Source of the DNA: Ostrea edulis
Lineage: Eukaryota
Reading direction: 5' to 3'
Length of the DNA: 64,000 nt
Assembly (NCBI RefSeq): GCF_947568905.1
Contig: NC_079172.1
Span: 29,388,001-29,452,000, forward strand
Shown here: positions 23,355 through 47,299 of the stretch, piece by piece
How the letters are laid out: every line of letters begins with the position of its first letter
Position numbering within the stretch: the stretch's first letter is position 1
Position numbers and translations under genes: made by a program
Notes under the pieces: generated by a model
Told to the model about the DNA's origin: nothing
Databases searched by the model: none
Seen by the model: only the letters and a program-made list of their open reading frames with translations

Positions 23355-23815
23355 TATACTCCTGTTATTTGCAACGCTCTACGAGAAAATCGGGGATTTT
23401 ACTGTGGAGCGTTGCCTGCAACGTCCTGATGTTAGATGCTATATACCATATACGATTACTATCGATTAGTGATCGATTACTGATCTGATCGATTAGTCAT
23501 GTCTGGTATATAATAGCATGATGGTGATATTTTAATTTCGTAAATAATATTGATATTAATTAGGGCACATGTTTTGTTAAAATGTTGATATAGACATGTA
23601 CATATGAAAGAGAAACAAATGAATTGAAAGAGAAATGGTAATTTATAACGGAATAATTAAGCCGCATGAAGCATACGATATATTGTTCATAAATCTCTAT
23701 ATTTTATGCAATTTATTCATAGAAAATTTTTCTTGTCAGTTTAATCTTTTATATATGTCAACCCGATGTATATTTTGGTATCGTAATGTACTCGGGATTT
23801 TAGTACCCCAAAACC
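23355..23815 (-). mobile_element. Second copy (inverted, one end lost) of the MITE at 9675-10109
   Basis: Reverse-complement similarity across ~400 bp. Confidence 0.75.
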
Positions 23816-23849
23816 TATCTAAATATAGAAAAAGATTACTCGACAAAAC

Positions 23850-24420
23850 ACACGGAAGTCAAACCGGTTGATACTGGTTATGTTCGTATGCCATACGTTA
23901 GTAAACAAAGTGCCTAAGAACACAAAAAATCATTCGCCCTACGTCAGAGTTCTATATTTAATCAACTTCATTAGCGAAATATATCCCAAAAGTTTAAAAT
24001 CGGTCAAGTTTAATATATAGTCAATTACAAATTTTAAATACAGTGTTTACATATAGAATTTGAGATGTGTAGATTGTAGCAACGAACTTAAGAACTATGT
24101 TTTACGCTTCCTATATATTAATACGCTATGCATTCGTATATAACCTGGTGTCGCCAATTTTGAGTGCGCAGAAGGATTTTTTTTGGAAGGAGAGGGCTGT
24201 GCCGGTTTAGGGAGTGTGTGTGTCTATTGTCTTGAAGGGGTTTACGGGCTTCTTCAGATAAGTAACTCGTCTTTTAAGTGTCGTGGTACATTGTTGAGTT
24301 TCTAAGATTCATTTAAGTAATTCTGTTCTTGCTACAATGGAAAATATCGGCTGAATTGAGGTTTTCAAGATGGCGGGCTTCATTTCAAGTGACGTAAATA
24401 TGGCTGACGTAGTGGATATT
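23850..24420 (+). promoter_or_regulatory. Candidate promoter region
   Basis: ETS-type CGGAAGT (~23853), YY1-type AAGATGGCGG (~24367) and TGACGT/ACGTCA sites (~23941, 24389, 24405), at the start of a long TE-free block. Motif evidence only. Confidence 0.4.
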
Positions 24421-26363
24421 TTTAAATTAGGACTTCAGCTTCATGAATTTGTTTTTGTTTTGCGAATATTTTATTTAATTTAATAAATTGCTGATTTTTT
24501 AAAGAGGTTTTGTGATGTGTTAGTAATGGGTTGAATGGTCTGAAATGCACGGCTGCTCCGTATGGGGCAGCCATTAAACTTTTCATTGCCATGCTAATTT
24601 TTTCAGTGAACATAGACATATAAAGAACGGAGAAAATTCCTGTTGGTGGTTTAAAGCAAGTATGCTCAAAGTACGAGTATGTTGATTGTTACCGTTCACG
24701 TGGTAATTGCAAATTTGCATGAGGAAGGCCACATTGTCTTTAATCACAATATTAAGTATAAAAGCTTCTGCTGAAAGTTTCCATATTTGGTAAAAGCCAA
24801 ATTTGTTCTTTATACTTGTGTTCGAAAATGCCTTAAAGGTACATTTTCAGAAATGAATGTCAACCAAGAGCTGATGAAATAACAGACTGAAGATCAGCTA
24901 GGACAGGCAAGCAAATAAGTAAAACAAATGTTGCATAAATGAATATTTAGGGGGAAAAAGGCAGACTACGTATTGCTGTATTTGGCTGTAACGTCATAGC
25001 TTTAAATTTTGAAAAATACTATCGTGTCCTTCCAATTTCTTTGCTATGCTTTCCTAATGAGCAAGTTTCAGATACTTCTCTATGAACGTCAGAAGTCCAA
25101 AGCATGAAGTAAAAGTATCAAAAGGAGTGGTACAGAAATGCAAAACAAAACGAGACCGAAAAGAAATTCTATTGCAAATGATTTCAAGTTATGTAAAAAC
25201 CGGTATGTATGTGAAACATTTCCAGGATAGAAAGTTATCCGAAGCGTGCGCCAAGGTATATACTAAATGAATGCAAGCAAAAAGTGATCCGTGACTAAGA
25301 GGAAAAATTGTAAAGGTATTGTGGTATCTTAAAAAAAAATAATGCTCGGAGAAACCTGAAAAGAAATGTAAGTTGAGCAACTGTCAAAAAAAATAAATGG
25401 TGAATTGATGTGTTGCGAAGAGTTCAAATATAAATAACAGGTCAGTAAATGCACACAAAGGGCGTTCTAAATAAGACAAATGATTTTTAAAGAGAAAGAT
25501 GGACATGGTGATTCAAGTAGCCATGATGCAAGCCCTTATAATGTAAGTTGCGTTTTGTGTACATTGTGAGGTGTAGGAAATGTATTTAAGGAGGATGAAT
25601 TTCGTGATGATGAAAGATTGTGAAGTGTGGTAAAATTTGTATCTTAATTGATTCAATATTAAGGACACATGTTTCGGTTAACTTTCTGTTAGAAATTCAG
25701 GAAAATGTTTTGGCAATAGGATTGCTAATTCAAAATTGGAATGAAAATTGCAGATAATTGGTTTTAACAAGAGTAACTTTCCTGAGTAGAGAAAACTTAG
25801 ATAATGCTTCAATTTTGGGGTGAGGGTGTTAATATTTTAGAGAATTCATCTGGTGTCAAGTGTTGACACTAATTGGAAATTAATTAGCTGGGGGGGGGGG
25901 GGTGTAGGAAAGGGATATGTTTTTATTGTATTCTAGGTGTTCTTAAAAGTGAAGTAAGAAGCTTGGTGATGTGAAACAGATGAAGTGTAAATGTTTAGAA
26001 TGCTAATGAATTGCGGTGACTAAACGCAAGATGCCTAGAAGAGGTGCCCATTACTATTGAAGGTTTACCATGATTTAATTAAGCAGTCGCTGACTTGCTG
26101 TTTCGAACGTGTTATTTTGCCAGAGTGTGGTAAGCAAATCTGAATTGTGCTCTTGAGATAAAAATTTGGGGGGGGGGGGGGGGGGGGGAAAGTTCAATAC
26201 ATAACAAGTCCTTTTCAGGAGTCTTCGTCGAAAAGTTGCTGGAAAAGCGAAAAAAGAAGTGCTCAAGATGTGATGATCATTTGATCCGAGATACGTAATT
26301 ATGTTGGATTAATTTGCTAAACTCTTAGATCTTGAACATGTAATTTCCTCATTTGACTTTAAA

Positions 26364-29300
26364 ATAACAGAAAATAGAATGAAAAATCTACTTAAAAATG
26401 GGAATATATGACATCACTAAAATTGCATTTGTCTTTGAATTTGGGAGAGCAGGTTGAAATGAAGGGGGGAGGGATAGTTTTGATAAATTTTAGTTTCAGT
26501 ATTGTCGGAACTTGCTGTTTTCCAACAAATGAGTGTTGCCATTCACACATCAGAAAGTGGAGTTATTTTAGGAGTGCTCTTGCCTACAAAGTGCATGTAA
26601 TTTAACTGATGGTGGAATTGGAATTTGATTGTCCTAACCGTGAGTGAAGTCCACCCATAGTATAAATTTTTTCCCTTAAATTGTGCAAGGAAATATTTGG
26701 TTGCTTTAAATATCTTGTTTATTAAAAAATATCAATTACTTGAGTGACAATCATTGGATGCATTGGTAGAGAGGGTAGTGCTAATCAGCTTATTTCAGGC
26801 ACATCTGGTCCACAAATGAAGACCAAAACTGAATTCATCCAATGGATAGTAATAGAATCCTTGTCTACATTGACCCATTTAAGTGACCGAAAGTTTGGAA
26901 AGTGACTTGTATGCATAAAGATTGGTATGGTGTTTGCTACTTGTCTAAATGTTCCTTCATATGTCCTTTTTTTATTTAAAATTATTTGTTAAGAAATTTT
27001 ATTGAAGTTGATACTTTTGTAGTTGACTGTTTCTTGTTTGACCACTCTTAAATTTGAAAATTGCATTCGAGGGGGTTGGAGAAATATTTTTGCAGCTCCT
27101 ATACCCCAGCCTACAACCTTGACTATTGAAATCTGATGCTGCTGTAAAACCATGCTTCAAGCTGGTGTGTATGCCCAGTGTTCCTGTCGTGTTTTGGGTC
27201 CAAAAGTAAAAGCATTGAAAGCTTTCTCCCTACCGTTGGTGGTCTGTTTGCTGGTAGGCTATTGTATTTTTTCTCTGTATATGATGATTTTGTAATTCTT
27301 GTATATTTTGCTTCTTTTCATGAGCCCATTTTGAAAATCAGAAATGTATGAATAATTTAACATTATGCATATATTATCAAGAATGATTCAATTTGTAAAC
27401 TGGGGATTTTCAAAATTGTTATCATTTTGAACTTGTTGACATGTATATTTTGCATGGTTGGGGTGGGCGTGTAAAATTTAACGGAGTTGTGTTTCAGATT
27501 TGTAACACTTGAGATTGAACCATGTGCCTGTAAATTGATTTGATTGATGCTTCTACTTCTGGTAAAAAAAACTTTTTATTGTGGTTTATAATTACATTTG
27601 CATCACGAAGTATTTGTTGAACTTCATTAAAAAATATTTTTCAGATATGTTAAGTGCATTATCTCCTTTCCTTTGTTCACTTATCTTTATAAAGATTCAA
27701 ATGTGATAAGTCATGTTGTTTGGGTGTGTGCAAATGCAGTTTTTTAGGCTTCCAGTAGAAAGTGTTTGTTTTTTTTTGACTATACAAGAAAGTTATCCCA
27801 AGAAAGGTATCTGCATTTCTCTTCTGACTTAATGGAACTGCTGCAATTTGAAAAGGCTGCGTAAGTTACCCACTTGTTTCGTTGTTGTTTTTCATTTGTG
27901 AAAACTTAAGATAACAGAAAATAGAATGAAAAATCTACTTTAAAATGGGAATATATGACATCACTAAAATTGTCTTTGAATTTGGGAGAGCAGGTTGAAA
28001 TGAAGTGTGGGGAGGGATAGTTTTGATAAATTTTAGTTTCAGTATTGTCGAAACTTGCTGTTTTCCAACAAACGAGTGTTGCCATTCACACATCAGAAAG
28101 TGGAGTTATTTTAGGAGTCCTCTTGTCTACAAAGTGCATGTAATTTAACTGATGGTGGAATTGGAATTTGATTGTCCTAACCGTGAGTGAAGTCCACCCA
28201 TAGTATAAATTTTATCCCTTAAATTGTGCAAGGAAACATTTGGTTGCTTTAAATATCTTGTTTATTAAAAAATATCAATTACTTGAGTGACAATCATTGG
28301 ATGCATGGGGAGAGGGTAGTGCTAATCGGCTTATTTCAGGCACATCTGGTCCACAAATGAAGACCAAAACTGAATTCATCCAATGGAAAGTAGTAGAATC
28401 CTTGTTTACATTGACCCATTTAAGTGACCGAAAGTTTGGAAAGTGACTTGTATGCATAAAGATTGGTATGGTGTTTGCTACTTGTCTAAATGTACCTTCA
28501 AATGTCCTTTTTTATTTAAAATAATTTATTTGTTAAGAAATATTATTGAGTTGATACTGTTGTAGTTGACTGTTTCTTGTTTGACCACTCTTAAATTTGA
28601 AAATTACATACGAGGGGGTTGGAGAAATATTTTTGCAGCTCCTATATCCCAGCCTACAACCTTGACTATTGAAATCTGATGCTGCTGTAATACCATGCTT
28701 CAAGCTGGTGTGTATGCCCAGTGTTCCTGTCATGTGTTGGGTCCAAAAGTAAAAGCGTTGAAAGCTCTTTCTCCCTACCATTGGTGGTCTGCTTGCTGGT
28801 AGGCTATTGTATTTTTTCTCTGTATATGATGATTTTGTAATTCTTGTATCTTGTATATTTTGCTTCTTTTCATGAGCCCATTTTGAAAATCAGAAATGTA
28901 TGAATAATTTAACATTATGCATATATTATCAAGAATGATTCAATTTGTAAACTGGGGATTTTCAAAATTGTTATCATTTTGAACTTGTTGACATGTATAT
29001 TTTGCATGGTTGGGGTGGGCGTGTAAAATTTAACGGAGTTGTGTTTCAGATTTGTAACGCTTGAGATTGAACCATGTGCCTGTAAATTGATTTGATTGAT
29101 GCTTCTACTTGCTCCTGGTAAAAAAAACCTTTTTATTGTGGTTTATAATTACATTTACATCACAAAGTATTTGTTGAACTTCATTAAAAAATATTTTTCA
29201 GATATGTTAGGTGCATTATCTCCTTTCCTTTGTTCACTTATCTTTTTAAAGATTCAAATGTGATAAGACATGTTGTTTGGGTGTGTGCAAATGCAGTTTT

Positions 29301-29460
29301 TTAGGCTTCCAGTAGAAAGTGTTTTTTTGTGACTATACAAGAAAGTTATCCCAAGAAAGGTATCTGCATTTCTCTTCTGACCTAATGGAACTGCTGCAAT
29401 TTGAAAAGGCTGCGTAAGTTAACCACTTGTTTCGTTGTTGTTTTTCATTTGTGAAAACTT
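26364..29460. repeat. Tandem segmental duplication, 2 x ~1.55 kb, non-coding
   Basis: ATAACAGAAAATAGAATGAAAAATCTACTT starts at 26364 and 27911 (period 1547). The copies are collinear with scattered substitutions and small indels. Confidence 0.95.
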
Positions 29461-30299
29461 CAAAAGTATTTTAGTGATGACTTGTGTGTACACTATATTT
29501 TTGACAATTGATGTTGGAAGTTACATGTTGGGGTGGGAAATGTACAAGTTTTTCAGTATGCCTTGTTGACATCTTTGGATCTTGTCAAGCGACACTTTTG
29601 ATTGCCTTGGTTGCACAGTAGAATATCCTGATTGTGTTGTGTAATCGACTATTGAAGAATTCCGAAAGTATGATAAAAGTGTTGGTAAATGGAATTTTGA
29701 TGCAACGCTCTAGTGTAAGCTGCGCTTTCTTATTTACAAGTTTTAGATGATTCTTTCTCCCCCCAACTGTTTAATGTAGCGTTCAATTGTTCATGTACTA
29801 CTGCATACTATATTATGTAAGATGGAATTAACAGTATTGACCTTTTGACCTGCAAATGAATAAACATGTAGCTAGATCTATAGCTTTTATTATAATTAGA
29901 AGAAATACAATGCATTCTTAACAGTTCTGAAGTATTCGAATTTGTTTCTTTATATATTCACTGGTGTTGTTTCGCATTGATTTAAATTTGCTATACTGTT
30001 CAATACTTGCATGACCTTTTACATGTACATAGTACACTTGATTTTAGCTTAACATGAATGGGGGGAAGGTTTTTGCTAACTTGTTTTGCATTAACAGGTC
30101 GCCACCGACTTCTTTTTCAATTCCTGCTGATTTTTCTAAAGACCCAAACATACAGGTGCTTCGTCTATTCCTGACAACCACCCTGAAATAGCAGTAGTGC
30201 AAGTTTTTGTTTTACAGTTTTCTTTCTAATATTGCTAGCATCACTTCAGCTTAATATCTTCATATGTAGATGTATAAATTGTTGATAAGCACTCTATAA

Positions 30300-33200
30300 C
30301 CTGAGGGAATATTAATTAAGTTTAGGTAGGGCAATTTTGAAGGCTCCTTTTCAGATATGGCATTTTTAATTGGATCCCATGACTGATGAAATCAAATACC
30401 CAAGCACTCAGCAAGCTGCATCTCTAATATGGATTTAACTTGAACGGTATTGACAGCTTTCGTCATTTGAGTATGAAGGGAGGGGTGGGCACTTGAAGAA
30501 GTCTGCCAAGTTTCAGAGTTTGAAGAGTTCATGACTTTTGGTGATCCTTTTTTATGACCAATCTCTTGAAGTGCGACAGTCCTCATGTAGAGGTTTGACC
30601 GAAAATCCTGTATGGCAAGTGTTTTATACAAAATGAGTCTATAATTTTGTTAATTGAGAATCCATTTCTGATTTGAACAATTGTATATATGTCAACATTA
30701 AAGGGGGGGGGGGGGGGGGGGGTAAAATCTTAAACGATATCTGAGTTTTCAGAGTCCAAGTCTTTCCTTCCGGAAAACGGTGAATCCAGCATAAATTCCA
30801 TCTGAAAGCAAATTCTTTGTGCAAGCACAGAAGGGGTCGCCAATTCCCACAATAGGATTCTTGAGTGTTCCAGTTTACATGGAATTTTGTTTGAAGATTG
30901 ACGGTTACCTTCAGGTTTCCAAATCGGCAAGTTACACATTTCCATTTCACAAAAGGATAACTGCTACCTAAAATATACAATAAGGTGATAAGAAATGTGG
31001 ATAAAGGGGGAGGGGGGGACACTTAACTGTGTTCATGAAGTTTCAGATCTAAGGTTTGGCGAGACGTAGAAGAATTCTGCAAAAAAAAGTTAATAGGACC
31101 AGTGAAGTATACCAGTAATGGTTCCTCCAATCTACAGCTTTGAAAAGCCACCAACTCCATCGTGGGACTGTCCCAGATTGATTTTTCAGTGGTATTGTTA
31201 AAAGTTGAGAAAATGACTACAGCAAGAATGAATTTATTTAGGCCATGTGTTTTCCATTTAGAAGATCAATGTACATTATATGTACTGTTGTAATGGGGGG
31301 AGGGGAATATTGTAAATAATTACTGACTTTCAGAGTCCAGCTCAAGACCTTAAACAGTGGAACCACCAGCCCAGAATTCAAACATTACAGCAGCTTTCAA
31401 TTTGAAGGATTCAAATTCTAGATTAGCAGAGATCAAAGAGAAAACCTCAGATAGGATTGTTGAAGTGGAATTTATCAAGAATTTTGCGGAAGAGAAGATA
31501 TTTCCTTAATAGCAGTTTGTCTTCCATAACATTTTCCTGTAGGGATATGTAGAAAAATTGATTTCTTTTCATCCTCGAATGTATTTGCATGCAGTCAACT
31601 GAATTGTATTTGGGGGAGGGGAAAATCAAACCATGCCTCAGTAGTTTCAGAATTTGTGCAAGACCTTGAGATCCTGCAGAAGTTCCTGTGTTGGATAATG
31701 TTGCAAATCCTTAGATCTATAGGATTAATGGAGTACTTTAAATCGATTTTTCCCAAGGACGTGCCAATGAATTTAAGCTTTTCAAGTAAGAGATTCCCGG
31801 TTCTGCATTTTCCATGTCATCAGAATGGTAAAGTGATTGGTTATGTATTAAATGGTGGGAGGGTGAATTTTAACAACTAATGAAGTTTTCAGGGTCCAGC
31901 CCTTTGCAGTACTCGAGTCTTCAAAATAGTGAAAGCAGTCCCAAGTTCCATCAGCTCAGTTTCGAAAGACGGGATTCAGAAGCTTAACTTTTTGCAAGCA
32001 ATTTTGAAAGAAAGCAATTTTTTTAAGAAGAGCATTTAAAACATGAGATATAGGGCAAGTAAAATCTATTGCATCGAGTTAAAGTATTTTATGTAATTGT
32101 AGACCTTTTGGGGGGGAGGGGGGAATCTAATGCATGTCCATTAAGTTTCAGAAATTCAAGCTTGAAACAATCCAAAAGAATTTGGCAAAAGTTTGGACAC
32201 GGACCTGTTGAAAAATTTCAAAGATCTGATCATTGGTGTTCTCCTTGAGTGAATTTTCAGTAGAAAGGATTTTGAACCAATTCCATTTTCTTTCCAATGG
32301 AAGTCGAAGATTGCATGATGTGCTACTTCATAGGGAAAAACTTAAACTTGCAAAGTTTTGTATCCAGCTTTGATTTTAAGATGGGGATTGTATAAGGCTT
32401 GAGGTGACGAATGCTGTCCAAGATTCATGAAAGAATGATCCACATGCAAGTGCACTATTTCCTAACCAGCGTTAAGATGTTTACCATTTGTAGGGAATTT
32501 TGAAAAGAAAGACGGGATTACTGAAGGGCAAGTTATTTTAAGTTAGAAAGGATTTGTTGATGCGCTTCACTTGAACTTTGATTGGGGGGAGGGAACTTGA
32601 TACCCAACATTTCACAAGTTTCAGATTGAAGTTTTGCAAGACCCTATAGGATCCAGCCAAAGTCCTGTGCTGCATATTCAATTTACCAATGAGTGTTCTA
32701 AATCCATTTTCAGTAGGATTCTTGAAAACTTGGAAGATGAATTAAATTGCTGCAAGTAAGAGATTCCCAGTTTTTTCCATGTCATCAGAATTGCAGTGAG
32801 ATTTGTGTTATGGGGGAGGGGGAATCTTACAACTTTTATAAAGTTTTCAGGGTCCAGCTCTTTGCCGTACTTCAAAATAGTGAAAGCAGTCCAAGTTCCA
32901 TCATTAAGCAAAGCAACTGCCAAACGTAATCTCACAACTGAGGGGGAATTTTAAACATGTACATTAGGTGATGCAATTAAGAAATTTCTACAGGTGTGAA
33001 AAATCCAAAGATGGGTCATTGAAGTGCACTGCGGGATCCAGTAAGAAAACTTAAAGACGTGTGATTTTTCAAATAGAAGATTTTCTTTGGTTGTTTTTTT
33101 TACCCGAAGGCAAAAATTGCATGTCGTACAATGGACGGAAAGGAAAATATTTTCATGTATTGTAGAAGTTTAGCCTCATTTTGAAAATGATGAATCCCAT

Positions 33201-34990
33201 CCAAGTTACAGCATTAAAAGCATCTTCCTTAATGCAGAAACACTTTAAAAGAAAATTTAGATCAACAAGAAAACTGCAGTACATTAGGATTGTAGAAGTA
33301 TTTATTTGACCGAGACATTTTAAAAGAAAAATCTAAAGATTGTCAGTGTTTCCATATTAAAAGTTGTCCATGATGCTAGATTTAAGATGCAACACTTCAC
33401 AGGATCTGTATTTTCAGCTTTGATATTGAAACAGGAAACCTTGGACTTTAATCTTGATGTAGGGGGCTTGTGGACCTAACCATGTCTGTCAAGTTTCAGA
33501 ATTTAGGTATGACAGTCAGTAAATAAAGCAGTGTTGAAAGAAAGCCCAGTAGTGGATTTCTGCAGAGCTCAACAGTAAGAAGAACATTTGATGTTGAAGT
33601 AGGGAGTGTTCCATTTTATTTTTCAGAAATGAATGCTTGTCGAGATTCAATTTGTAATGAAGGGGGGAGAGATGTGCTATTTTTACTAAGTTTCAGAATT
33701 TATGCTAGTGCTACCCGAAAACAGAATCCAGTCCAAGTTCCAGCTTGCGCGTCACAACTAAAGCTGATGTTGACATGGAAACTTTTGATGTAGGATTTTT
33801 GAAGGGCTCCAAATTGCAGATTGAAATTTAAAGCATCAAATATTCAATTGGCAAGTTCACTACAATACGTTTCTCAGGTATTTAAATGTAACAATCTTCA
33901 TTGTGTGTGGCGTAGCATAGGAAATAAATAAATTATCTGTAAACTTGAAATTCTGAAGGGGTAGGGGATACCTAACAATGCCTATCAAGTTTCAGAGTTT
34001 ATAGGTTACTGAGGAAGTAAAGAGTCGAGCTCGGGTTGGAGAAAGCAAGTACAGTGCTGTAGACCAGCTGCGATGATCAAATGAAATCATTGGAGAGTTC
34101 CAATTCATAAGATTAGTAGGATTCTTTTCTTTAACTTTTTGAATTGACAGCAAGTTGCCAAATTTTTCATGGAAGTGTAAAGGTGAAAAAAGGGAAAATA
34201 TCAGCTGATACAAATTCTGATGCTAAACATACTGCTTGGGTGTGAAAAATTTATATGTGCTTGGGAGAAGATTGTGCATTAATGTTTCAGATAAGAATTC
34301 CGAGTACCATGATAAATCCCTGCTAATGCAGCTTTGTAAAGAAATGCTGTGTTGCCTCCTTACTAAAGTCCATTTTAAAGAATTTAACGAGAGAAAAAAT
34401 GCCGACCAATATCCTTGCTGGATTTACATTGAGTGAATGATGGTAGTAAATTTTACTTGCAGAAAGATATGTATCTAAAAGCATACACATCATAAAGAAT
34501 TTTGATATTGCTATTGCATATTGTTGCCATTTGAAGATTAAAGTTTTTGCAGGGTATACATTCAATTTTGAAGAGTAAATATGAAAATCGACGTGGATTG
34601 TTGTCCAAAAACCTGTTTGCTTCCTTGCAGGTTTTCATTGGATTAATTCTTTGGAGAAATTTCTTTTATAAAATGGATTTCTATAGGATTGCTGAATTTG
34701 GATAAGATTCGTGGATGCCAGTGTTGTGCCATTGTGTAATGAAATCGAGTAGGAACTACTACTTGCTATGCAAATAAACATCTTCAACATGAAAATTCCA
34801 TCAATAGAGAATCTATGCAGTTTTGCCAGAATGAATAGGCATTGGAAGGGGGGGGGTAATATCTGCAGTATTTTCAGGAAAACTGGTAGAAGAAAAAAAA
34901 TTCTTGATTTGAAGAAGGGCCGTTTTTCTTGAATCATCAAAGGAGTAAACCATGCAATAATCCATCCAGTAAGAAAATCACCCATCTTAA
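30300..34990 (+). other. Array of ~14-16 diverged ~200-320 bp units with conserved splice-like and pairing motifs (candidate multi-exon lncRNA)
   Basis: G-run + ~20-30 nt + TTTCAG (often AAGTTTCAG) ending at 30516, 30752, 31046, 31333, 31650, 31892, 32151, 32624, 32850, 33499, 33696, 33995, 34290 and 34877. ATCC, TAGGATT and GCAAGT recur in the same order. No consistent reading frame. Confidence 0.6.
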
Positions 34991-37859
34991 TGTGCTTTAG
35001 TCATAAATTTTTTAATGTTAAATTATGTTAGTTGAAACTTTTTAACAAGTATTGTACTGTGTTAAATTATCTGCATAGCTGCTTTGTTCTTTGTGTATAG
35101 GGGGTTGGGGCTCTTTTTACCTATAGGATGAAGTGATGGAAAGGTGCATATAAGAGATGCTTATCAGTGTTATGCCTTGCAGTCGGTGCACAATTTGTAT
35201 TTTGAAAAAAAGGAAGGTATTTCTTGCTACCCATTTTTATATTGTGTATGATTCTGTACCATAGTAGGCTTTAGATTTGAAATAACGCAGATTTTCTGCA
35301 AAGTATTGTTTTTTATACTTCACCTTGTTTGTTGATCAAAGATGTGGAAGCTTTATAGCAATATCACAGATGTAGAGTTTTACTTTTATTTGTAGAGAAG
35401 GCTATCTATTGGAAGCATGCACCATTTCATGTAAATTATAGAAAACTTGGGATATATTGAATATAACTGATGGTGAAGTGTGGTAATTTGCATGCCATAA
35501 ATTTGATTTTCATAGTTTCATATAATCTGCTATTGTAACCAAGACTTGCTGTGTTGGCATTTCAAACTTCCTCAATTGTCACGAAATTGGTTCTTTCCTA
35601 GTTGTCGCAATTTTCTGGCAGCAACACTATTTTAATTATGTTAATATTGCCTATCTGCATACTATGCAATAATCCAAGATTTGTGTGAAGTAGCAAGTTA
35701 TCCTAGCTATTGTAACTTTAATTCAACATGTACTTGGTTGGGTTTTGTTTTCTCCTCTTATGTACCAGTGTGAAGATGATTGATTTGGCATGAGAAGAAA
35801 ATTAGCAGCTATTAGCAGACACTAAATAACCTTCCCTGCCTCAATGTGGTATTCTTTGTGATATTTAATATGCTGTGTAATTTTTATTGTGTGTTTCTTT
35901 TTGTTGTATATACCAAGTAATGTTTATATATGAAAATTAGCAGTGGTTAATGGTCACTAAGTAACCCTCACTGCCTTCATGTGGTATTCCATTTCTTTTG
36001 TATACTAAATTTTCAGTAATATTTCTGCGCACATCCTAAGGTGTAATTTCTTTGTCGTGTTGATGCATAGCCAAAATATTTGTAACCCCTACTAAAATGT
36101 GTTTCTAAGTATTAAGTGTAGTAGTTACCACTTGGACATCTAGATAATGTTGAAGCATGAAAGTTATTTAATTTTGTCCTTTCTTTACATGCTAATTGTA
36201 TGCAGCACTAGCTCTGGACTTGGGGCTTTCTGAAAGTGGCACTGTGTGGATGATATAGTCTGCTATCTTTACCCCTACGATGTAATTAACATTTAACACA
36301 TTTTTTGTGTTCAGTTTAATGTAGTCTACTAGACTTGCATATAACTTATTTTTTATCAAAATTGAATCGTAAACAGTTTGAGGTAAAAGCGAGTCATACA
36401 TTACACTTATCTATGCATTTAAGCTTAATACTATCAATGGTAAACAAAATTTTTGTTGGCAGTTCTTGTTGAATTGTCCTGTGATCAGTTGAACACGGGT
36501 TTGTGTTTTTGTTTGTTATTTTAACAGGTTTTCTCTGCTTTGGCATCTGTAAGTTAATTTACATGTATATCATACAGGGTCATTCAAGTTTGTAATGTGT
36601 AGCATGGTGATTCAAGTAGCCATGTTGGTCTTAAAACAGCATTTATGTTCCTGGTTACTGCCCGTTATCATAACATTGTGTAATGGTCATTAATTGGATT
36701 ATTTCTCTCTGCTTTAAAACTAATTTAGTTTCTCTTGATTGCTCTGTTCACTGTATATTATGTTGTGTGGTATGTAGACCTGTGGAAAGGTCTAGGTTTT
36801 CTGTTTGCAGATTATGGCGTATGAAGGGGAACAAGGATAGTATATGTGCCTGGCAAGATAAATATGTATACTAGATAAGCATGATGTGGCCCTTCTAAAT
36901 TGGCATGGTCAGAAAGTGAGAAAACACTTGCCGACAGCTGGTCAGAGCAATGGGAAAATCTCACCTCCCCCTCCTCTCTACATGAGGGGAGTTAGGGTTG
37001 GGTGGCCGGCTCGCAGCTAACAGCTGACCACTATTTGGTGTGCCTTAATTGTCAATCTAAATTTTGTGATTAATTCTATAAAAAATTTGGGTGATTTGTA
37101 AATAATTTTATGAGTGTTTTATGAAATGAAACTCTAGATCTGATGTTGTAATGATGAAGAGATTTTCGCGCAATTAAAATTTCCAAAATCTTGAATACAT
37201 TGTAAATTCCATCTAGGATAAGTGATTTATTCTTAATAATCCAAATATTAAATTGTTATGATAAATAACATTAATTTAGGATTAAAGAATTAGTTACAAC
37301 TGTCAAAATGGTAATAAAAAATATTTTGGTGAATAAAAAACAAGTTTTTAAATTGGAAGTGTATATTGTGAAACTTGGAAAGATTTGAAAAATAAAATGA
37401 AATTAAAATGTTTTTATGTAGTTGGTTTTCTGTATTGCTGCATGCAACCATGGTTCACGTCTTTTTTCAAGGATGTTGCCTTTCATATCACATTTAAATG
37501 TGCGACATTTTCACGATTAGAAACTTAAAATGCCCATTTAATGAAATATGAAAGTTGCCTTGATTACAGAAGGTTGAGTCTTGGTTGCATGAATATTGAA
37601 AGTGTTTTCAGATTCTCTCCATGGATATGGGTATTTAATTATCGTACTGAACTGACCAAATGGCCATTTTGAAGTGCATGTACTTGTATGTCTAGGAAAC
37701 TGATTTAGTGAAGACATTGAGTGATCTTGTAGATCCTACAGTAACAAGGCCATAGGGTTCAAGGGTTAGGATTAAAGATTTTCTATTGGATGATCAATGA
37801 TTTTGAAGAATTTCACTTTTTCAGTGGATTTTGGTCAGCCTGCTAAAACTTGAAGCCAG

Positions 37860-40430
37860 AATTGGATCTGGTTTTTCTGCACCCAATCTAGGTCTGAATA
37901 CAGGTGCCCTTAGAGGGAGGTTGTGACAAGATGTCGGTGCAATATCTATGATAAAAGTCCATAACAACATTTGCTCTACTTTTAGTTTTAAAAAAGGTCA
38001 TGGTGCACCATATTAAGTTGAAATGTGAACTGATAATATATTTGAGAAAGTGGTTGTGACAAAATTTAGAACAATACCTGTAAACCATATTGGGAAAAAA
38101 ATCTGGTAAACTGTGACCTACTTCTACCCCTAAGGTAGGTCATAGTGCACCAATCCAGCTGAAATGCTAACTCCACTTTTAATTCCTCCAAGAGGAAGTC
38201 TGAAGAAATATGGCAATATCTTTATCCGTGTTTGGAAGGAAAAAAAAAGCCTGGAAAACTTTGACATATTTTGAGACCTGAAGTAGGTGAAGGATGGACC
38301 AATCCAGCTGAGATTGATGTTTTCCGCCACTCTCAACAATTTTTCAGTTATCTGGTGGCGCCCAGTTTTTATTGGTGGTAGAGAGAACCCAGATACATTG
38401 TGCCCGGGAAGAGACCACTGACCCTCTGCAAGTAAACTGGGAAACTTCCTCACTTGCCAGCGTGAGCGGGATTCGAACCCGCACCAAGCAGAGGTGAGGC
38501 CTGTGTGATTTTGAGGGCGATGCTCTAACCACTCGGCCACGGAGGCCCCTCAATCCACACGGGCTTAGCCCCTGTGTCTCAATCCAGCTGAAATGGAAAC
38601 TGAACTCCAAGAGGAAGCCTTTGACTAAAGAAGATGGGTGACTTTATCGAGCCGACGAACTCGCAAAGTAAATATCAAATTTAAAATTGAAGCTCTCTTG
38701 AAAAAGAAACATTTGCATTCTATAGTTAAAGCAATCAATCCATAGTTTCCAGAAATGCTCTTTCGATGTGCCCATTTCAAATGAAAAAATCCTATTCAAA
38801 TGCAAAAAACTCGCAAAATAACAGTAAATTTGACTTTCCCAAGCAGATTTTCATATGGAATCGGCGAAGATTGATTAAAAAATGTTAGTACATGTTCAGG
38901 TGTAATATGTTTTGTAAGTATGGAGACTTGACCCACTCTGAAAAAAACTTGACTTTCTTGTGTAAAACTTTTGTCATATTATCAAGAAAGTTTACATGTC
39001 CACGACGGGTGACTTTAGATAGCTTGAAATTCAAAAATTAATCATGGGATGAATAGCCAAGGTTGTATAGGGGCCGTCTCAATAAGTTTTGGGACAGACT
39101 TGGATTGCATATCTGGTTCGAATTCCAATTTCTCTCCTATCTATTTTTTTCTTGTGAATTATTAGACTTCCCACAATTATTTGTCTCTGGCATTTTATGC
39201 TAAGTTTTACTCCTAGCATGCAATCTTGCAACAATCAAAAAGTTGCTCAAAGGCACAGTACAAAAACAAAGCAAATCAAGTGTGTGACTTCAAAGAAGAA
39301 AATTTAATTAAAATCATCATTCACAGGCAATATCATGTATATCAGACATTAAACGGCTTTTAACGCTCACATAATCACACTGGTGCCTGGAGTACCTAAG
39401 GTACCAAATGACACTGCATACATGCTTACAACATCCAACAGTACGTGCTCCACATTTCCATTAACAAATTAACTGATGCGAGTGAGAAACCTCGCGTTTT
39501 GTGATGTAAATTAAATGTGGAATAGCGTTTTCTGTATGGTGCGCAGTATTAATGCTTTGATTTGGATTCAGTTTTTATCCAACAAATGTTTTTGAACAGC
39601 ATTTAAAACCTACTGGTACTAGTATACCGAATATAATAAAGGCATCAGTTCTCGCCTCTTTTGGTACAACTCTGAGGCCAATTTTACAGTTACAGAACAC
39701 AAATTTGTTAGATTTCCCAGCAAATACAAATGGGACAGAAACAATATGATCCATATATTTGGGGTTTTTTAAATTCTAAATATTTTGGACAGCGTTTTGG
39801 TATGATACTGTATTTATTGTAACTACGGGTACCATCAATGCAGATTTTAAACTCACGATTTGCAACCGGTGCCCAATCATGAATACAGGCTTATTGTTCA
39901 CCAAGTTCACCCATCTTTCAGGACAATGCCTATATATCCATAATGAAAAAAAAGCCTGGAAAACTGTTTGATCTACTTTTAATCTTAAATAATGTAGGTC
40001 ACGGACGGACTGGCCAATCCAGCTGAAATGCAATCTGAACTCGTATTCCTCTTGGAGAAAGCTTAAAAATTTCAGGGCAACATCTGTATCTGTAACCAAA
40101 AAAAGTCTGGAAAACTGTTTGACCTACTTTTTAAGTTGGCCAAACCAGTTGAAATGCAAAGTATATTCCTCTTGGAGGAAGTTAATGTGTAAATTTCAGG
40201 GCAACATCTGTATCTGTAACAAAAAAGTCTGGAAAACTGACCTACTTTTTAAGTAGGCCAATCCAGCTGAAATGCAGAGTCACTCTCGCACTTCTTGAGG
40301 GAAAAATTGTGACAAAATTTCAAAGTTGTACATGCATCCGTTACAGAAAAAAGTCCGGAAAACATGACCTTGGACGGACAGACAGAAGCACGGATAGTGC
40401 CATATCATAATCCTAATAGCGGATGTATAA
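37860..40430. repeat. Decayed Helentron-type satellite carrier (CCAATCCAGCTGAAATGC units), split by later insertions
   Basis: The unit motif occurs at ~38150, 38300/38580, 40015, 40140 and 40259. A GGACGGACAGACAG...TATAAAAA terminus lies at 40373-40432. Confidence 0.55.
38312..38550 (-). mobile_element. tRNA-derived SINE, family A copy 1
   Basis: Head GGGGCCTCCGTGGCCGAGTGGTTAGAGC...GGTTCGAATCCC (A and B boxes), tail GTGGCGGAAAACATCAAT, TSD CAATCCAGCTGA (38300-11, 38580-91). Confidence 0.9.
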
Positions 40431-41886: not shown

Positions 41887-42603
41887 TTAATCAGATTCTA
41901 GAACATTTTTGGAAGCAGATTCGAAGTTGCTTTGTTTACGGTCCTCTTCGACATCTTCATCGCCTACAAATTCATCATATTCATCATTTTCTTCATCATC
42001 GTTCACATCACTCATTTCTTCTGCTTCTGTCAACAAATTCAAATCAGGCTCTGCATCTTGGATGAGAATCTCGTTGCATTTCTCATTGGTGGAGTTCATC
42101 ACTCGACTGACCATCTTCCTTACGTGGCGATTCATGTGGCGCTTTAAGACAAAACCCCGCCCAAACCTCCGTCCACAGATCTGACAGGGAAACGGCTTAA
42201 TTTTCTGATGCGTCTCCAAATGGTGATACAGCGAGCTCTTGTCAGTGAAGCTTTTCCCACACTCCTCACAAGAAAATGGACGCTCTCCACTGTGGATTCG
42301 GAGGTGCACGGTCAGTGCACCTTTCTGTCCAAATGCCTTTCCACACACGCTACACACAAATTCTCTGACTCCCTCGTGTACTGTCTTCATGTGTCGGACT
42401 AGATTGCAGCTCCACCTAAAGGCCACACCACATACAGCACACTGATGGTCCCGTTCATTGGTGTGGATTTTCCTGTGAGCCCACAGATTTCTCGAGTCAC
42501 AGAATGCCTTGTCACACATATCACATTTGAAAATCCTCTCACCTGAATGGGTTCTTAGGTGAGTTTTCATAGCAGCAATCAGGTAGAAAGCTTTCCCACA
42601 CAC
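41887..42603 (-). CDS. C2H2 zinc-finger protein, last coding exon; full CDS complement(join(41887..42603,43620..43816,46098..46809)), 541 aa
   Basis: AG acceptor at 42604-05. Five fingers plus the end of a sixth with HTGE(R/K)P-like linkers, then an acidic tail and TAA at 41887. Confidence 0.92.
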   Translation of the reverse strand: MCGKAFYLIAAMKTHLRTHSGERIFKCDMCDKAFCDSRNLWAHRKIHTNERDHQCAVCGVAFRWSCNLVRHMKTVHEGVREFVCSVCGKAFGQKGALTVHLRIHSGERPFSCEECGKSFTDKSSLYHHLETHQKIKPFPCQICGRRFGRGFVLKRHMNRHVRKMVSRVMNSTNEKCNEILIQDAEPDLNLLTEAEEMSDVNDDEENDEYDEFVGDEDVEEDRKQSNFESASKNVLESD

Positions 42604-43216
42604 CTATTAAAGTGTAAAGTTATAAAAACAGTCTCTATGCAAATTTCATTTAACATCAGAATTTAGAAAAAAAAAGTTTCACTGCAAATGCAACCTTCAG
42701 TTAACATATACAGTACCATAAAACATGGTTATTGGTGAAGCTCCAGGGCCAGCAAAAAACATTTAGTTTTAACCAAACTTCATTATATCCAAGAATATTT
42801 TGGTTATTTTCCTCTCATAGGAGAATATTCACTGATCGAATCTTTTTTCTTATATTTCTTTTGAAATTGACATTGCTCTCATCAGACAATGAATACATGT
42901 TTGTTGTGAACTAGTTTTTTTTAAAATACCACCTGCCTGTGTGATCATTACCAAATATGGAGCGTCGTCAATTTCAAAGGGTGTATATGCTGTTCCATTT
43001 AAAGTAACAAATGGGTCAATGATATATTTTGGTACTTAAATTTAGTTGATATTTTCAAAAAATACATAATGAATTATGAAACAATAAACTGTTTTTCTTT
43101 GTTGTTTTATTGTGTGATGAAGGTAGCAAGCATTGCAGAAAAATTTGCATATAAACCTGCTAACGCGGATTTAATATGAATTTTTGCTGCAATGTTTGCT
43201 ACCTTCAACACTCGAT

Positions 43217-43440
43217 TGATGTTTTCCGCCACACTCAACAATTTTTCAGTTATAAGGTGGTGCCCAGTTTTTATTGGTGGAAGAGAGAACCCAGTTACAA
43301 TGTACTTGGGAAGAGACCACCGACCTTCCGAAAGTAAACTGGGAAACTTTCTCACTTACCGGCGTGAGCGAGATTTGAACCCACGCCGACAGAGGTGAGA
43401 GGCCATGTGATTTTGAGCATGATACTTGGCCACGGAGGCC
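43217..43440 (-). mobile_element. tRNA-derived SINE, family A copy 2
   Basis: Same family as 38312-38550, with 14-15 bp TSD (C)CTTCAACACTCGAT at 43202-16 and 43440-54. Confidence 0.9.
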
Positions 43441-45674: not shown

Positions 45675-46097
45675 TGAATTTCAGAGGTGCAAGGACATCA
45701 CAAAAAAGCCCAAATAAGGTAGGCAGGTACAGTTGAAGTTTGGTATCCCAACCACTGATATCTCGAATATTATGGATATGTTGAAGTGATTCAGAAGTCC
45801 CAACCACTTACTCTCTAAGTGTTTTACCCTTGATATCTCAAATCCTCGGATATCTCCAACTTTTTTCTCGGTCCCATCGAGTTCAAGATAATGAAGCTTT
45901 ACTGTATGTAAAATTAAACCAGGTTATTATCCGAGATGAATTACTGTCAGTGTTTAAAGGATAATTTAACAAATCCAATTTCCCCCCCCTTAGTATGCAT
46001 GCATTCAGTCAAGGAAAATGAAATTTTACAATCCTGATAATTTAAGTTCTTTCTAAAATAAAAAATCAACACCTTGATTTAAAAATGTGTCGAATAC

Positions 46098-46809: not shown

Positions 46810-47299
46810 CCACTGTAAACTACCGATTCATCTGGAGATCCCCTCTGAAAAACACAAATTTAGTTTTCATTTTCATTATTTCTATAAAAATTTTGTTTGC
46901 AGCCAATGTCATTAATTCTGGTAGTATCTCAGAAAGAGATCATATTGGTACGTGTATTTCAGTATGACATACATGTATACATAAAAACTATTATAATAGC
47001 AATAAGAATCTTTTGCACCAGGAGGGGTTTCAACACATCTCTTTGGGAGGGGGGGGGGTTCTATGTATGACAGTATTACTTAAGTTAATTGACCTAAAAA
47101 GTCAGTATCAAAATATATGAGCTTGCATTATTAAGAATGAATGCCAGATTTCACAAGGTACATGTAACAACCCCCCCCCCCACCCACCCCTCCTATTTTG
47201 TTTGCCTTGGTGTGAACAAACACCCAAAAATAGTTCGAAATGTAGTAAAAGGAATTCAAAACTCCCACATAAGAATCATAATCAAAACTCCCAAAATAT

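What the first reader, a model, noticed from the sequence alone, without database searches (positions are those of the whole stretch)
30300..34990. Cryptic array of ~15 diverged non-coding units that keep the same ordered motif grammar (candidate multi-exon structured lncRNA)
Seen in the sequence: the units have lost overall similarity (only 31650-31965 vs 32624-32905 still align), yet the same motifs recur in order. These are a purine G-run, a branch-point-like CTAAC/TTAAC/CTAAT/CTTAC, TTTCAG (often AAGTTTCAG), ATCC(AG), TAGGATT, (G)CAA|GT and TTCCAT. Acceptor-like sites end at 30516, 30752, 31046, 31333, 31650, 31892, 32151, 32624, 32850, 33499, 33696, 33995, 34290 and 34877. Spacing is ~200-320 bp, with roughly double gaps where a unit has decayed. 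Exact TAGGATT occurs 8 times (30853, 31452, 31720, 32714, 33285, 33791, 34117, 34684); my rough estimate is under 1 by chance. Read as splicing, this gives ~100-180 nt exons with no shared reading frame and 93-134 nt introns. The ATCC...GGAT pair could close a helix inside each exon. Inference: selection on RNA motifs rather than protein, as in a repeat-unit scaffold lncRNA or a host transcript for small intronic RNAs. I recognise no known family.
Basis: partly seen in the sequence, partly recalled or inferred. Interest (0 to 1): 0.8.

Follow-up and report, generated by a model that had tools for sequence, protein, structure and literature searches.

The report
Old splice-site-like repeat array, seen unspliced
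About nine kilobases of flat-oyster DNA are a very old, worn-down tandem repeat whose roughly 20 units all keep a short signature resembling the end of an intron, but RNA from three of the predicted sites is unspliced, so the proposed multi-exon gene is not supported and any function is still open.

Summary
Nineteen to twenty + strand modules lie between 26.2 and 34.9 kb. Each is a G-run, then about 38 nt, then TT[TC]CAG (0.03 expected by chance). All 11 + strand copies of AGTTTCAG in the 64-kb window lie at 25.06-33.99 kb. TAGGATT, GGCAAGT and GTTTCAGA are 18-33 times over-represented on one strand only. Units alternate between two types, giving a dimer of about 530-600 bp. A 9-nt invariant core sits in otherwise roughly 60%-conserved units, and equal-identity neutral simulations never gave more than 2.

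The multi-exon, structured reading is not supported. RNA-library contigs run straight through two of the five named junctions and a third acceptor, and no joint was found. In 18 of 19 modules an AG lies 8-22 nt (mostly 8-13) upstream of the CAG, and there is no pyrimidine tract. Donors all have A at -1, and two of the five named begin GTT or GTG. Folding shows no excess stability. Pfam, Rfam and protein searches found nothing.

The array sits in a sharply bounded 14-kb G>C skew domain (24-38 kb). Added A-tails point to + strand RNA.

Best reading: an ancient non-coding tandem array inside an unspliced + strand transcription unit, with short constrained islands. A neutral relic remains a serious rival.

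Earlier first-reader notes on this genome mention "splice-junction echo" arrays elsewhere. I did not test them.

The parts
24001..38000 (+). Strand-asymmetric domain (G>C on the + strand) that contains the whole array; inferred + strand transcription unit
   Evidence: GC skew is +0.08 to +0.37 in all 14 one-kb bins and about 0 on both sides. It persists after masking G/C runs in 13 of 14 bins. The domain is bounded by repeat copies at 23403-23818 and 38312-38554.
24367..24411 (+). Promoter-like motif cluster at the start of the skew domain: AAGATGGCGGG (YY1-like), TGACGTAA and TGACGTAG (CRE-like)
   Evidence: Read directly from the sequence. That these are promoter elements is an inference from general knowledge and was not tested.
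25040..25073 (+). Most upstream core copy (CTAAT ... GAGCAAGTTTCAG) without an adjacent G-run
   Evidence: AGTTTCAG at 25064; sequence.
26168..26218 (+). Module: G21 run, spacer, TTTTCAG
26464..26499 (+). Module: GGGGGGAGGG ... AGTTTCAG
27460..27497 (+). Module: GGGGTGGG ... TTAAC ... GTTTCAG
28007..28042 (+). Module, the duplicate of 26464-26499
28307..28339 (+). Module: GGGGAGAGGG ... CTAAT ... TTTCAG
29012..29049 (+). Module, the duplicate of 27460-27497
29527..29556 (+). Module: GGGGTGGG ... CAAGTTTTTCAG
30478..30516 (+). Module, type A (TTTCAG|AGTTT)
30703..30752 (+). Module, type B (G20 run ... TTTTCAG|AGTCCA)
31006..31046 (+). Module, type A. An RNA contig (30881-31088) runs straight through it.
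31295..31333 (+). Module, type B (TTTCAG|AGTCCAG)
31612..31650 (+). Module, type A (TTTCAG|AATTT)
31854..31892 (+). Module, type B (TTTTCAG|GGTCCAG). RNA contigs 31728-32001 and 31765-32001 run straight through it.
32110..32151 (+). Module, type A
32584..32624 (+). Module, type A
32812..32850 (+). Module, type B
33462..33499 (+). Module, type A with a weakened G-run (GGGGGCTTGTGG)
33662..33696 (+). Module, type A (GGGGGGAGAG ... TACTAAGTTTCAG)
33958..33995 (+). Module, type A (GGGGTAGGGG ... CCTAAC ... AAGTTTCAG)
34263..34290 (+). Decayed module (no true G-run, GTTTCAG). An RNA contig (34028-34399) runs straight through it.
34847..34877 (+). Last module (G9 run ... TTTTCAG)
30853..34690 (+). 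Span holding the eight exact TAGGATT sites (30853, 31452, 31720, 32714, 33285, 33791, 34117, 34684), usually as TAGGATTnTTGAAG and 70-122 nt after a CAG in six of the eight
31775..31965 (+). Best-conserved block, copy 1 (donor-like GCAAGTAAGAG, TTTTCCATGTCATCAGAAT, G-run, acceptor-like site, first ~75 nt of the B unit)
   Evidence: Pairwise alignment; offset peak at 940-980 nt; 83% identity over 104 nt.
32745..32905 (+). Best-conserved block, copy 2 (a later duplication or conversion patch)
26359..29460 (+). Recent 1.55-kb tandem duplication inside the upstream part of the array (two copies, 89-100% identical by segment)
36964..36971 (+). The only + strand CCTCCCCC in the window, the exact complement of the module G-run GGGGGAGG. 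It lies 2.1 kb downstream of the array and is locally paired in its own hairpin.
   Evidence: Its relevance was not shown.

Best explanation
The region is an ancient, locally amplified, non-coding tandem repeat. The founder segment was about 290 bp, or a two-part A/B unit of about 530-600 bp, and it carried a stretch resembling an intron 3' end: a G-run, a branch-point-like yTnAy, then AAGTTTCAG. The segment was multiplied head to tail into at least 19-20 copies spanning about 26.2-34.9 kb, with core remnants from 25.06 kb. Later partial duplications followed: a 1.55-kb one at 26.4-29.5 kb and a patch of about 190 bp at 31.8/32.8 kb.

The array lies inside a 14-kb + strand transcription unit with no open reading frame (24.0-38.0 kb). 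Where RNA-library contigs cover it, the sequence is continuous and unspliced. The splice-like signals are therefore inherited features of the repeat unit, not working exon borders at the sites tested.

The unit as a whole has decayed to about 60% column conservation. A few short islands (AGTTTCAGA, TAGGATTnTTGAAG, GGCAAGT) have been kept far better than the rest. I read this as constraint on short binding sites in the unspliced RNA. Under that reading the array is a repeated protein-binding platform, possibly decoy 3' splice sites.

Shown: the array, its extent, its non-coding nature, the uneven conservation, and the unspliced contigs. Inferred: the + strand transcription unit and its promoter, the origin from a real intron end, and any binding function.
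For: - Array and extent. There are 19 modules with constant spacing of about 38 nt, and 11 of 11 + strand AGTTTCAG copies in the window fall inside it.
- A/B alternation.
- Later duplications.
- Non-coding: stops in every frame of most units and non-triplet indels between the best copies. No Pfam hit for the ten longest open stretches. No homologue of the 116-aa stretch.
- Uneven conservation: 13 invariant columns and an invariant run of 9 in eight A units, against a mean of 5.5 columns and a run of at most 2 in 40 neutral star-tree simulations of the same mean identity. Strand-specific k-mer excess.
- Transcribed and unspliced: four RNA-seq libraries of one study hold 17-24% of the sampled words. 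Their contigs cross 30930/31047, 31785/31893 and 34290 without a gap, with no joints anywhere.
- Strand of the RNA: untemplated A-tails follow 31088, 33317, 33331 and 34399 on the + strand, and no T-tail is among the listed loose ends, although T-runs outnumber A-runs 25 to 13.
- Transcription unit: a sharply bounded G>C domain at 24-38 kb that survives masking of G-runs.
- Poor splice-site quality: an AG 8-22 nt upstream (mostly 8-13) in 18 of 19 modules, and a pyrimidine fraction of only 0.47-0.71 at -20..-4. All five named donors have A at -1. The AG-exclusion rule is from PMC1431707 (title and abstract listed).
Against: - The RNA evidence is thin. It comes from contigs, not reads, from one small study of unknown tissue. 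Only 3 of about 20 modules are bridged, contigs drop rare isoforms, and DNA carry-over in the libraries was not excluded because I could not lay a silent control stretch.
- The module does look like a 3' splice site, with a branch-point-like yTnAy about 12-25 nt upstream of a YAG, so low-level or tissue-specific splicing remains possible.
- No binding protein, no cross-species conservation and no abundance measure supports a function. The constrained-island inference assumes a star-like history; short-tract gene conversion could mimic it.
- No transcription start or poly(A) site was mapped.
Confidence: 0.45

Rival explanations
1. Neutral relic. The array is an old satellite-like tandem repeat decaying without function. 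G-runs persist through slippage. The shared islands reflect uneven homogenisation (short gene-conversion tracts around the G-runs) and a nested duplication history. Transcription is incidental read-through or noise.
For: - Poly-G and poly-C runs are common all over the window, so G-runs need no selection.
- All pairwise similarity is centred on the G-run-to-CAG segment, and the best pair is a discrete patch of about 190 bp, as conversion or partial duplication would give.
- A recent 1.55-kb duplication shows the locus is still rearranging.
- There is no structure signal and no known RNA family.
- The differences listed for the relative's or other haplotype's contigs fall in 'exons' and 'introns' alike: about 10 in 178 nt against 5 in 134 nt around 30.6-30.9 kb.
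Against: - A 9-nt core is invariant in all eight A units while immediately flanking columns vary. Equal-identity neutral simulations never gave a run above 2.
- Conversion tracts should give long pair-specific blocks, not a short island shared by all units.
- Several separate islands (TAGGATTnTTGAAG, GGCAAGT) are retained in order.
- The array lies in a strand-asymmetric domain and is found in four RNA libraries.
Confidence: 0.3
2. The array is a multi-exon, alternatively or weakly spliced long non-coding RNA in which each TTTCAG is a used acceptor and each (G)CAA|GT a donor. A variant is a cluster of alternative exons of which only one or a few are used per transcript.
For: - Each module has the layout of an intron 3' end, with yTnAy about 12-25 nt upstream of a YAG and constant spacing.
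- Donor-like GCAAGTAAGAG is well conserved in the best pair.
- The region is transcribed on the matching strand.
- If only one of about 20 exons were used per transcript, most contigs would look unspliced.
- A single + strand complement of the G-run lies downstream at 36964 and could in principle act as a docking site.
Against: - No joint in any of four runs, and no loose ends into foreign exons.
- Two of the five named junctions and a third acceptor are bridged by continuous RNA contigs of depth 9-77.
- A conserved AG lies 8-22 nt (mostly 8-13) upstream of the CAG in 18 of 19 modules, and there is no pyrimidine tract.
- Donors have A at -1, and two of the five named begin GTT or GTG.
- The proposed exons differ in length and share no frame or structure.
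Confidence: 0.13
3. A DNA-level element. The modules would be a tandem array of protein-binding sites in DNA: a G-box, then an A/T-rich element about 25 bp upstream of a TCAGA initiator-like site (a row of weak core promoters), or an enhancer or insulator array.
For: - The spacing G-run (-38), A/T-rich yTnAy (-12 to -25), TCAGA fits a core-promoter layout as well as it fits a 3' splice site. This is read from the table, and the promoter analogy rests on general knowledge.
- Head-to-tail repeats make any DNA motif look strand-specific.
Against: - RNA contigs read through the modules, and their starts do not fall at the CAG|A positions.
- No TATA-like consensus is present.
- No test was possible.
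Confidence: 0.05
4. Decayed protein-coding repeats. The units would be a dead gene for a repetitive protein, either on the + strand with glycine-rich linkers or on the - strand with proline-rich linkers.
For: Open stretches are longer on the - strand (up to 127 aa). Recurrent peptide-like strings such as xGTWTxF or x(I/V)G(F/L)L appear in some units.
Against: - No Pfam hit at E<=1 for ten stretches and no homologue.
- Stops occur in all frames in most units.
- The fewer - strand stops follow from the purine excess of the + strand.
- Indels of 1 and 7 nt lie between the two closest copies.
Confidence: 0.03

Closest known systems
NORAD (mammalian unspliced lncRNA built of 12 repeated ~300-nt units)
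   Same: Same architecture. NORAD is a multi-kb, unspliced transcript whose body is a tandem series of ~300-nt units from an old duplication. The units have lost overall similarity but keep several short ordered motifs far above chance (PMC4947167). Here there are about 20 units of about 290 nt with ordered islands and continuous RNA contigs.
   Different: - No sequence relation, and NORAD is restricted to placental mammals.
- The defining Pumilio element UGURUAUA is not enriched: 1 copy in the array.
- NORAD units contain conserved stem-loops, and none is seen here.
- NORAD has a mapped promoter, poly(A) site and binding partners. None of these was shown here.
Decoy (cryptic) exons that cause intron retention
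   Same: Both are splice-site-like signals inside RNA that stays unspliced. In the decoy model such sites engage the splicing machinery unproductively (PMC6097662 and PMC7373989, titles and abstracts listed).
   Different: Known decoys are single cryptic exons in introns of coding genes, whereas this is a tandem array of about 20. The sites here are weak by standard criteria. No host coding gene was found, and no retention mechanism was tested.
Short dispersed satellite-like arrays of oysters (CgiSat families, Helentron-borne repeats)
   Same: Both are oyster tandem repeats in euchromatic, gene-near DNA, in short arrays (PMC8268682 and PMC7492417).
   Different: - The published families are multi-copy, dispersed and usually transposon-associated.
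- This unit has no second copy in the 64-kb window outside the array.
- The core AGTTTCAGA is absent from the supplementary files of the CgiSat paper, which carry the consensus sequences. That paper concerns another oyster genus.
- The units here are far more diverged than a typical satellite, and TRF finds nothing.
Clusters of tandemly duplicated alternative exons with docking and selector RNA pairing (Dscam type)
   Same: Both have a row of duplicated units, each preceded by a conserved intronic element (here the G-run), plus a single complementary sequence outside the cluster (CCTCCCCC at 36964).
   Different: Dscam-type exons are coding, of equal length and in frame. Here they are non-coding, of unequal length and, where covered, unspliced. 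The complement is only 8 nt and sits in its own hairpin. The comparison rests on my general knowledge of that system.

Membership tests
Spliced multi-exon lncRNA | Exon-exon junctions present in RNA | tested here: not met
   There are no joints in 4 runs. RNA contigs are continuous across 30930/31047, 31785/31893 and 34290. The test covers only 3 of about 20 sites and uses contigs, so rare isoforms are not excluded.
Spliced multi-exon lncRNA | Canonical 3' splice sites: pyrimidine tract and no AG between branch point and acceptor | tested here: not met
   An AG lies 8-22 nt (mostly 8-13) upstream in 18 of 19 modules. The pyrimidine fraction at -20..-4 is 0.47-0.71. The AG-exclusion rule is from PMC1431707.
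Spliced multi-exon lncRNA | Usable 5' splice sites after each exon | tested here: inconclusive
   All five named donors are CAA|GT, with A at -1. Three are GTAAGA or GTAAAA (acceptable), one is GTTACA and one GTGTTT (poor).
   z-scores run from -1.5 to +1.8 for ten unit segments, and the helix is not consistently predicted. Covariation cannot be tested because both motifs are invariant.
Known RNA families, including snoRNA, miRNA and hammerhead (host-gene idea; retrozyme) | Match to an Rfam covariance model | tested here: not met
   No match at E<=1 in 23500-39500 on either strand. No tRNA in 20000-42000.
NORAD-type Pumilio-binding lncRNA | Many UGURUAUA elements at conserved places in the units | tested here: not met
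   TGTRTATA occurs once on the + strand in 30300-34990, and only three times on the + strand in 24-38 kb.
NORAD-type repeat-unit lncRNA (architecture only) | Unspliced transcript made of ~300-nt diverged units with ordered short motifs | tested here: inconclusive
   The units and motifs are met. The contigs are continuous. A single full-length transcript, its ends and its abundance were not shown.
Satellite DNA / tandem repeat | Head-to-tail units descended from one founder | tested here: met
   Same-strand modules with constant internal spacing, A/B alternation and pairwise local similarity of 62-83%.
Published oyster satellite families (CgiSat01-52) | Sequence match to a family consensus | tested here: inconclusive
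   The core AGTTTCAGA and its complement are absent from the supplementary files that carry the consensus sequences. That set is from Crassostrea gigas, not Ostrea. The Ostreidae satellitome supplement is not held.
Protein-coding repeat gene | Open frame or a domain match | tested here: not met

The most novel reading that the evidence does not exclude
The array would be the body of an abundant, unspliced, nuclear non-coding RNA in the flat oyster. Its roughly 20 modules would be constrained mimics of intron 3' ends (a G-run for hnRNP H/F-type proteins, yTnAy for SF1/QKI-type proteins, YAG for U2AF). They would bind and titrate 3'-splice-site recognition factors without being spliced. This would be a mollusc counterpart, by convergence, of sponge RNAs such as NORAD or PNCTR, built from decoy splice sites.
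Probability: 0.1. Interest if true: 0.75.

Novelty: new member of a known kind. Interest (0 to 1): 0.35.

Why it matters
If the islands are truly constrained, this locus would be a rare invertebrate example of a long non-coding RNA whose function is written in a repeated motif grammar. Such cases (NORAD, Firre, Xist repeats) have been the most tractable lncRNAs to dissect. It would also offer a natural test of whether arrays of splice-site look-alikes can act as decoys.

If the islands are not constrained, the locus is an ordinary decayed tandem repeat. The useful lesson is then methodological: splice-like motif grammars in AT-rich animal DNA can be inherited repeat features and need junction evidence before being called exons.

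Other first-stage notes on this genome report tandem repeats seeded on splice junctions, so a genome-wide look may be more informative than this one locus.

Tried and rejected
- Coding reading: six-frame open stretches, Pfam on the ten longest, and a word-based protein search with the 116-aa + strand stretch. Nothing was found.
- Known RNA families: Rfam at E<=1 over 16 kb and a tRNA scan. Nothing was found, so no hammerhead retrozyme, snoRNA host or SINE call can be made.
- Structure: folding of ten unit segments showed no excess stability.
- Relatives elsewhere:
  - A pattern scan of metagenome contigs gave 120 loci with single chance matches. None matched the unit profile.
  - Two exact-ORF look-ups were not on record.
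- Synteny in other oysters through the neighbouring zinc-finger gene: homologues of 62-81% identity exist, but only on contigs of 1.2-2.2 kb, too short to reach the array. I abandoned this route.
- Published oyster satellites: the core motif is absent from the CgiSat supplement, and the Ostreidae supplement is not held.
- Pumilio elements: not enriched.
- Docking-site idea: one 8-nt complement exists downstream, but it is locally paired and not significant on its own.
I could therefore not lay a silent control stretch, the 24-30 kb part, or the runs X3-X5.

Full report
**1. What is there**

On the + strand a G-run is followed after a few tens of bases by (A)AGTTTCAG or GTTTTCAG. This recurs every 200-320 bp.

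- The pattern 'G-run, 8-38 nt, TTTCAG' gives about 14 distinct sites, all on the + strand, against 0.03 expected.
- A looser rule (at least 7 G in 10 nt, 15-60 nt upstream of TT[TC]CAG) gives 19 modules between 26218 and 34877. The G-run-to-AG distance is mostly 34-41 nt. A twentieth module at 33499 has a weakened G-run.
- All 11 + strand copies of AGTTTCAG in the 64-kb window lie between 25064 and 33988, and only one copy exists on the other strand anywhere.

The array is therefore real, strand-specific and about twice as long as reported, because it also covers 26.2-30.3 kb. Tandem Repeats Finder sees nothing apart from a G20 run, so the units really are too diverged for ordinary repeat finders.

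**2. The motif grammar**

One copy of the recent duplicate was masked, and the null was a second-order Markov model. It returned the same words:

| k-mer | observed | expected |
|---|---|---|
| GTTTCAGA | 8 | 0.24 |
| TAGGATT | 7 | 0.39 |
| GGCAAGT | 5 | 0.28 |
| GGGAGGGG | 5 | 0.18 |
| CAAGTT | 10 | 2.2 |

The reverse complements of the 7- and 8-mers are absent from the + strand of the region; the complement of CAAGTT occurs three times there.

The order along a unit is:

- CAG;
- (A/G)TCCAG;
- CCAAGTTCCAT;
- TAGGATT at +70 to +122 in six of the eight cases (the other two lie some 400 nt from the preceding CAG, in the long decayed intervals);
- GGCAAGT at about +100 to +176;
- TTCCAT;
- the next G-run.

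**3. Unit structure and history**

Pairwise local alignments and a profile search show two alternating unit types. Type A reads TTTCAG|A(A/G)TTT and type B reads TTTTCAG|(A/G)GTCCAG. The real period is therefore a dimer of about 530-600 bp.

- Similarity between units is 62-83% and is confined to the stretch from the G-run to about 60 nt past the CAG.
- One pair is much closer over a discrete block of about 190 bp, 31775-31965 against 32745-32905, with unalignable flanks. This indicates a later partial duplication or a conversion patch.
- A recent 1.55-kb tandem duplication (segments 89-100% identical) sits in the upstream part, at 26359-29460.
- The unit profile finds no copy elsewhere in the window. 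Self-BLAST of the flanking stretches (23.4-26.35, 29.46-30.45 and 35-39.5 kb) finds only ordinary dispersed repeats, at 23403-23818 and 38312-38554.

**4. Is the motif retention more than neutral decay?**

I aligned eight A units of 290 nt.

| | mean major-base frequency | invariant columns | longest invariant run |
|---|---|---|---|
| Real A units | 0.60 | 13 | 9 (AGTTTCAGA) |
| 40 neutral star-tree simulations at the same conservation | about 0.60 | 5.5 on average | never above 2 |

Even at much higher simulated identity the run never exceeded 3. Site-to-site heterogeneity is therefore real.

There are two caveats. The true history is not a star, and short conversion tracts near G-runs could contribute. 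G-runs themselves need no selection, because poly-G and poly-C tracts are common throughout this window.

**5. Not protein, not a known RNA**

- Most units have stops in all three + strand frames.
- Longer open stretches on the - strand follow from the purine excess of the + strand.
- The ten longest open stretches have no Pfam match at E<=1, and the 116-aa + strand stretch has no homologue.
- The two closest copies differ by indels of 7 and 1 nt.
- Rfam finds nothing at E<=1 in 23.5-39.5 kb, and there is no tRNA.
- Ten unit segments fold no better than dinucleotide shuffles (z from -1.5 to +1.8), and the proposed ATCC...GGAT helix is not consistently formed.

**6. Transcription and splicing**

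Four RNA-seq libraries from one study, labelled 'mollusc metagenome', hold 17-24% of the sampled words of 30300-34990. I laid two of them (X1, X2) together with two runs of uncertain kind on 29800-35500.

- No joint of any kind was reported.
- RNA-library contigs run continuously over 30881-31088, which crosses the predicted intron 30931-31046.
- Contigs in two libraries run over 31728-32001 and 31765-32001, which cross the predicted intron 31786-31892.
- A contig runs over 34028-34399, which crosses the 34290 acceptor.
- The only loose ends in these libraries are untemplated A-tails after 31088, 33317, 33331 and 34399 on the + strand.
- Three of these sit on genomic A5-A8 runs, which points to oligo(dT) mispriming. 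No T-tail is among the listed loose ends, although T-runs outnumber A-runs 25 to 13 in the stretch. This points to + strand RNA.

Limits of this evidence: these are contigs, not reads. They come from one study. Rare isoforms are dropped by the assembler. I could not lay a silent control stretch, so DNA carry-over is not formally excluded. Run X6 (another organism label, kind uncertain) covers every bin at 90-99% identity without joints. This shows that the region exists in a close relative or in other haplotypes, but nothing more.

**7. Quality of the 'splice sites'**

- In 18 of 19 modules an AG lies 8-22 nt (mostly 8-13) upstream of the putative acceptor AG, because the conserved word is AAGTTTCAG.
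- The pyrimidine fraction at -20..-4 is only 0.47-0.71.
- Real 3' splice sites have a pyrimidine tract and an AG-free zone between branch point and acceptor (PMC1431707, and also PMC7317903).
- All five named donors are CAA|GT with A at -1. One is GTTACA and one is GTGTTT.
- The word CAAGTT also occurs inside the 'acceptor' (CAAGTTTCAG) and in CCAAGTTCCAT, so the donor-like motif is partly a recurring sub-motif of the repeat.
- In favour of the splice reading, a yTnAy element does sit about 12-25 nt upstream of the CAG in roughly two thirds of the modules.

My reading is that the founder unit probably contained a real intron end, and that the copies are not good acceptors now.

**8. Context**

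- GC skew is positive (+0.08 to +0.37) in all 14 one-kb bins from 24 to 38 kb and near zero on both sides. After removing G and C runs it stays positive in 13 of 14 bins, with sharp edges at 24.0 and 38.0 kb.
- Such G>C asymmetry is what long-term transcription of the + strand would leave. That is an inference from the known transcription-associated mutational asymmetry.
- At the upstream edge lie AAGATGGCGGG (24367-24377) and two TGACGTA(A/G) sites (24390-24411). These look like promoter elements, which is also an inference.
- No coding exon on the + strand was found in the domain.
- Upstream are transposon remains. Downstream, on the other strand, are zinc-finger ORFs.
- According to an earlier follow-up note of this scan, the genome is the flat oyster Ostrea edulis. 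I did not verify this independently.

**9. Explanation and rivals**

*Best reading, about 0.45.* The array is an ancient local tandem repeat inside an unspliced, non-coding + strand transcription unit. Its splice-like grammar was inherited from the founder unit. A few short islands are kept by constraint, most plausibly as binding sites on the RNA.

The architecture matches NORAD, which is unspliced, has 12 units of ~300 nt from an old duplication, and keeps five short motifs per unit (PMC4947167). It is not a NORAD relative, because the Pumilio element is not enriched. A decoy-splice-site role (PMC6097662) is the most interesting version of this reading, and it is untested.

*Rivals.*

| Rival | Probability |
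|---|---|
| Neutral relic with uneven homogenisation | about 0.30 |
| DNA-level array of binding sites or weak promoters | about 0.05 |
| Dead coding repeats | about 0.03 |

For the alternative-exon variant I looked for a docking sequence. The only + strand CCTCCCCC in the window, the exact complement of GGGGGAGG, lies at 36964, 2.1 kb downstream of the array. It is only 8 nt long and is paired within its own local hairpin, whose stability is unremarkable (z = -1.35).

**10. Relatives elsewhere**

- A pattern scan of metagenome contigs returned only single chance matches, and none matched the unit profile.
- The supplementary files of the C. gigas satellitome paper, which carry the 52 satellite consensus sequences, do not contain the core word. 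The Ostreidae set is not held as text.
- Synteny through the neighbouring zinc-finger gene failed because all homologues sit on contigs of 1.2-2.2 kb.
- Cross-species conservation, which is the decisive test, could therefore not be run.
- First-reader notes on other pieces of this genome mention tandem repeats seeded on exon-intron borders. They are unverified, and I used them only as a lead that such arrays may be common in this species.

**11. Verdict**

Non-coding, repeat-built, motif-retaining and transcribed all hold. Multi-exon, structured and snoRNA-host do not.
- Novelty: a new member of a known kind, namely a repeat-derived non-coding transcription unit.
- Interest is moderate to low until constraint or binding is shown.

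Noticed in passing
window 26359-29460: A recent 1.55-kb tandem duplication (segments 89-100% identical) lies inside the upstream part of the array. It carries two to three modules per copy.
   Followed up: partly
window 24367-24411: AAGATGGCGGG (YY1-like) followed by TGACGTAA and TGACGTAG (CRE-like) sits exactly where the 14-kb G>C skew domain begins. It is a candidate promoter of the non-coding unit.
   Followed up: no
window 36925-37045: A local hairpin holds the only + strand CCTCCCCC of the window, the complement of the module G-run. It is flanked by the short inverted ends GGTCAG...CTGACC and could be a small inverted-repeat element.
   Followed up: partly
window 38312-38554 (copies at 43214-43417 and 63380-63621): A dispersed repeat of about 240 bp, about 86% identical between copies. 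It has a tRNA-like GGTTCGAATCC-type stretch on the - strand, but ARAGORN calls no tRNA. It is probably a tRNA-derived SINE.
   Followed up: partly
window 23403-23818 and 9704-10057: Inverted copies (85-92% identical) of a dispersed repeat. One copy marks the upstream edge of the skew domain.
   Followed up: no
window 48079-50642 and 52302-53794: Two tandem-repeat blocks that stay open in several reading frames on both strands (for example KTPT(S/C)ESF and NLTDTLNAEG periodicities). The first has extreme C>G skew (-0.42 to -0.56).
   Followed up: no
window-wide (e.g. 10236, 10968, 21881, 41077, 47049, 57903, 62694): Long poly-G and poly-C runs of 10-25 nt are frequent across the window. G-runs alone are therefore not evidence of a shared element.
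   Followed up: partly
window 46069-46827 (- strand): A zinc-finger ORF whose 247-aa product is on record as its own protein, with homologues of 62-81% identity, all on short contigs of 1.2-2.2 kb. It may be a separate gene from the zinc-finger ORF at 41890-42603.
   Followed up: partly
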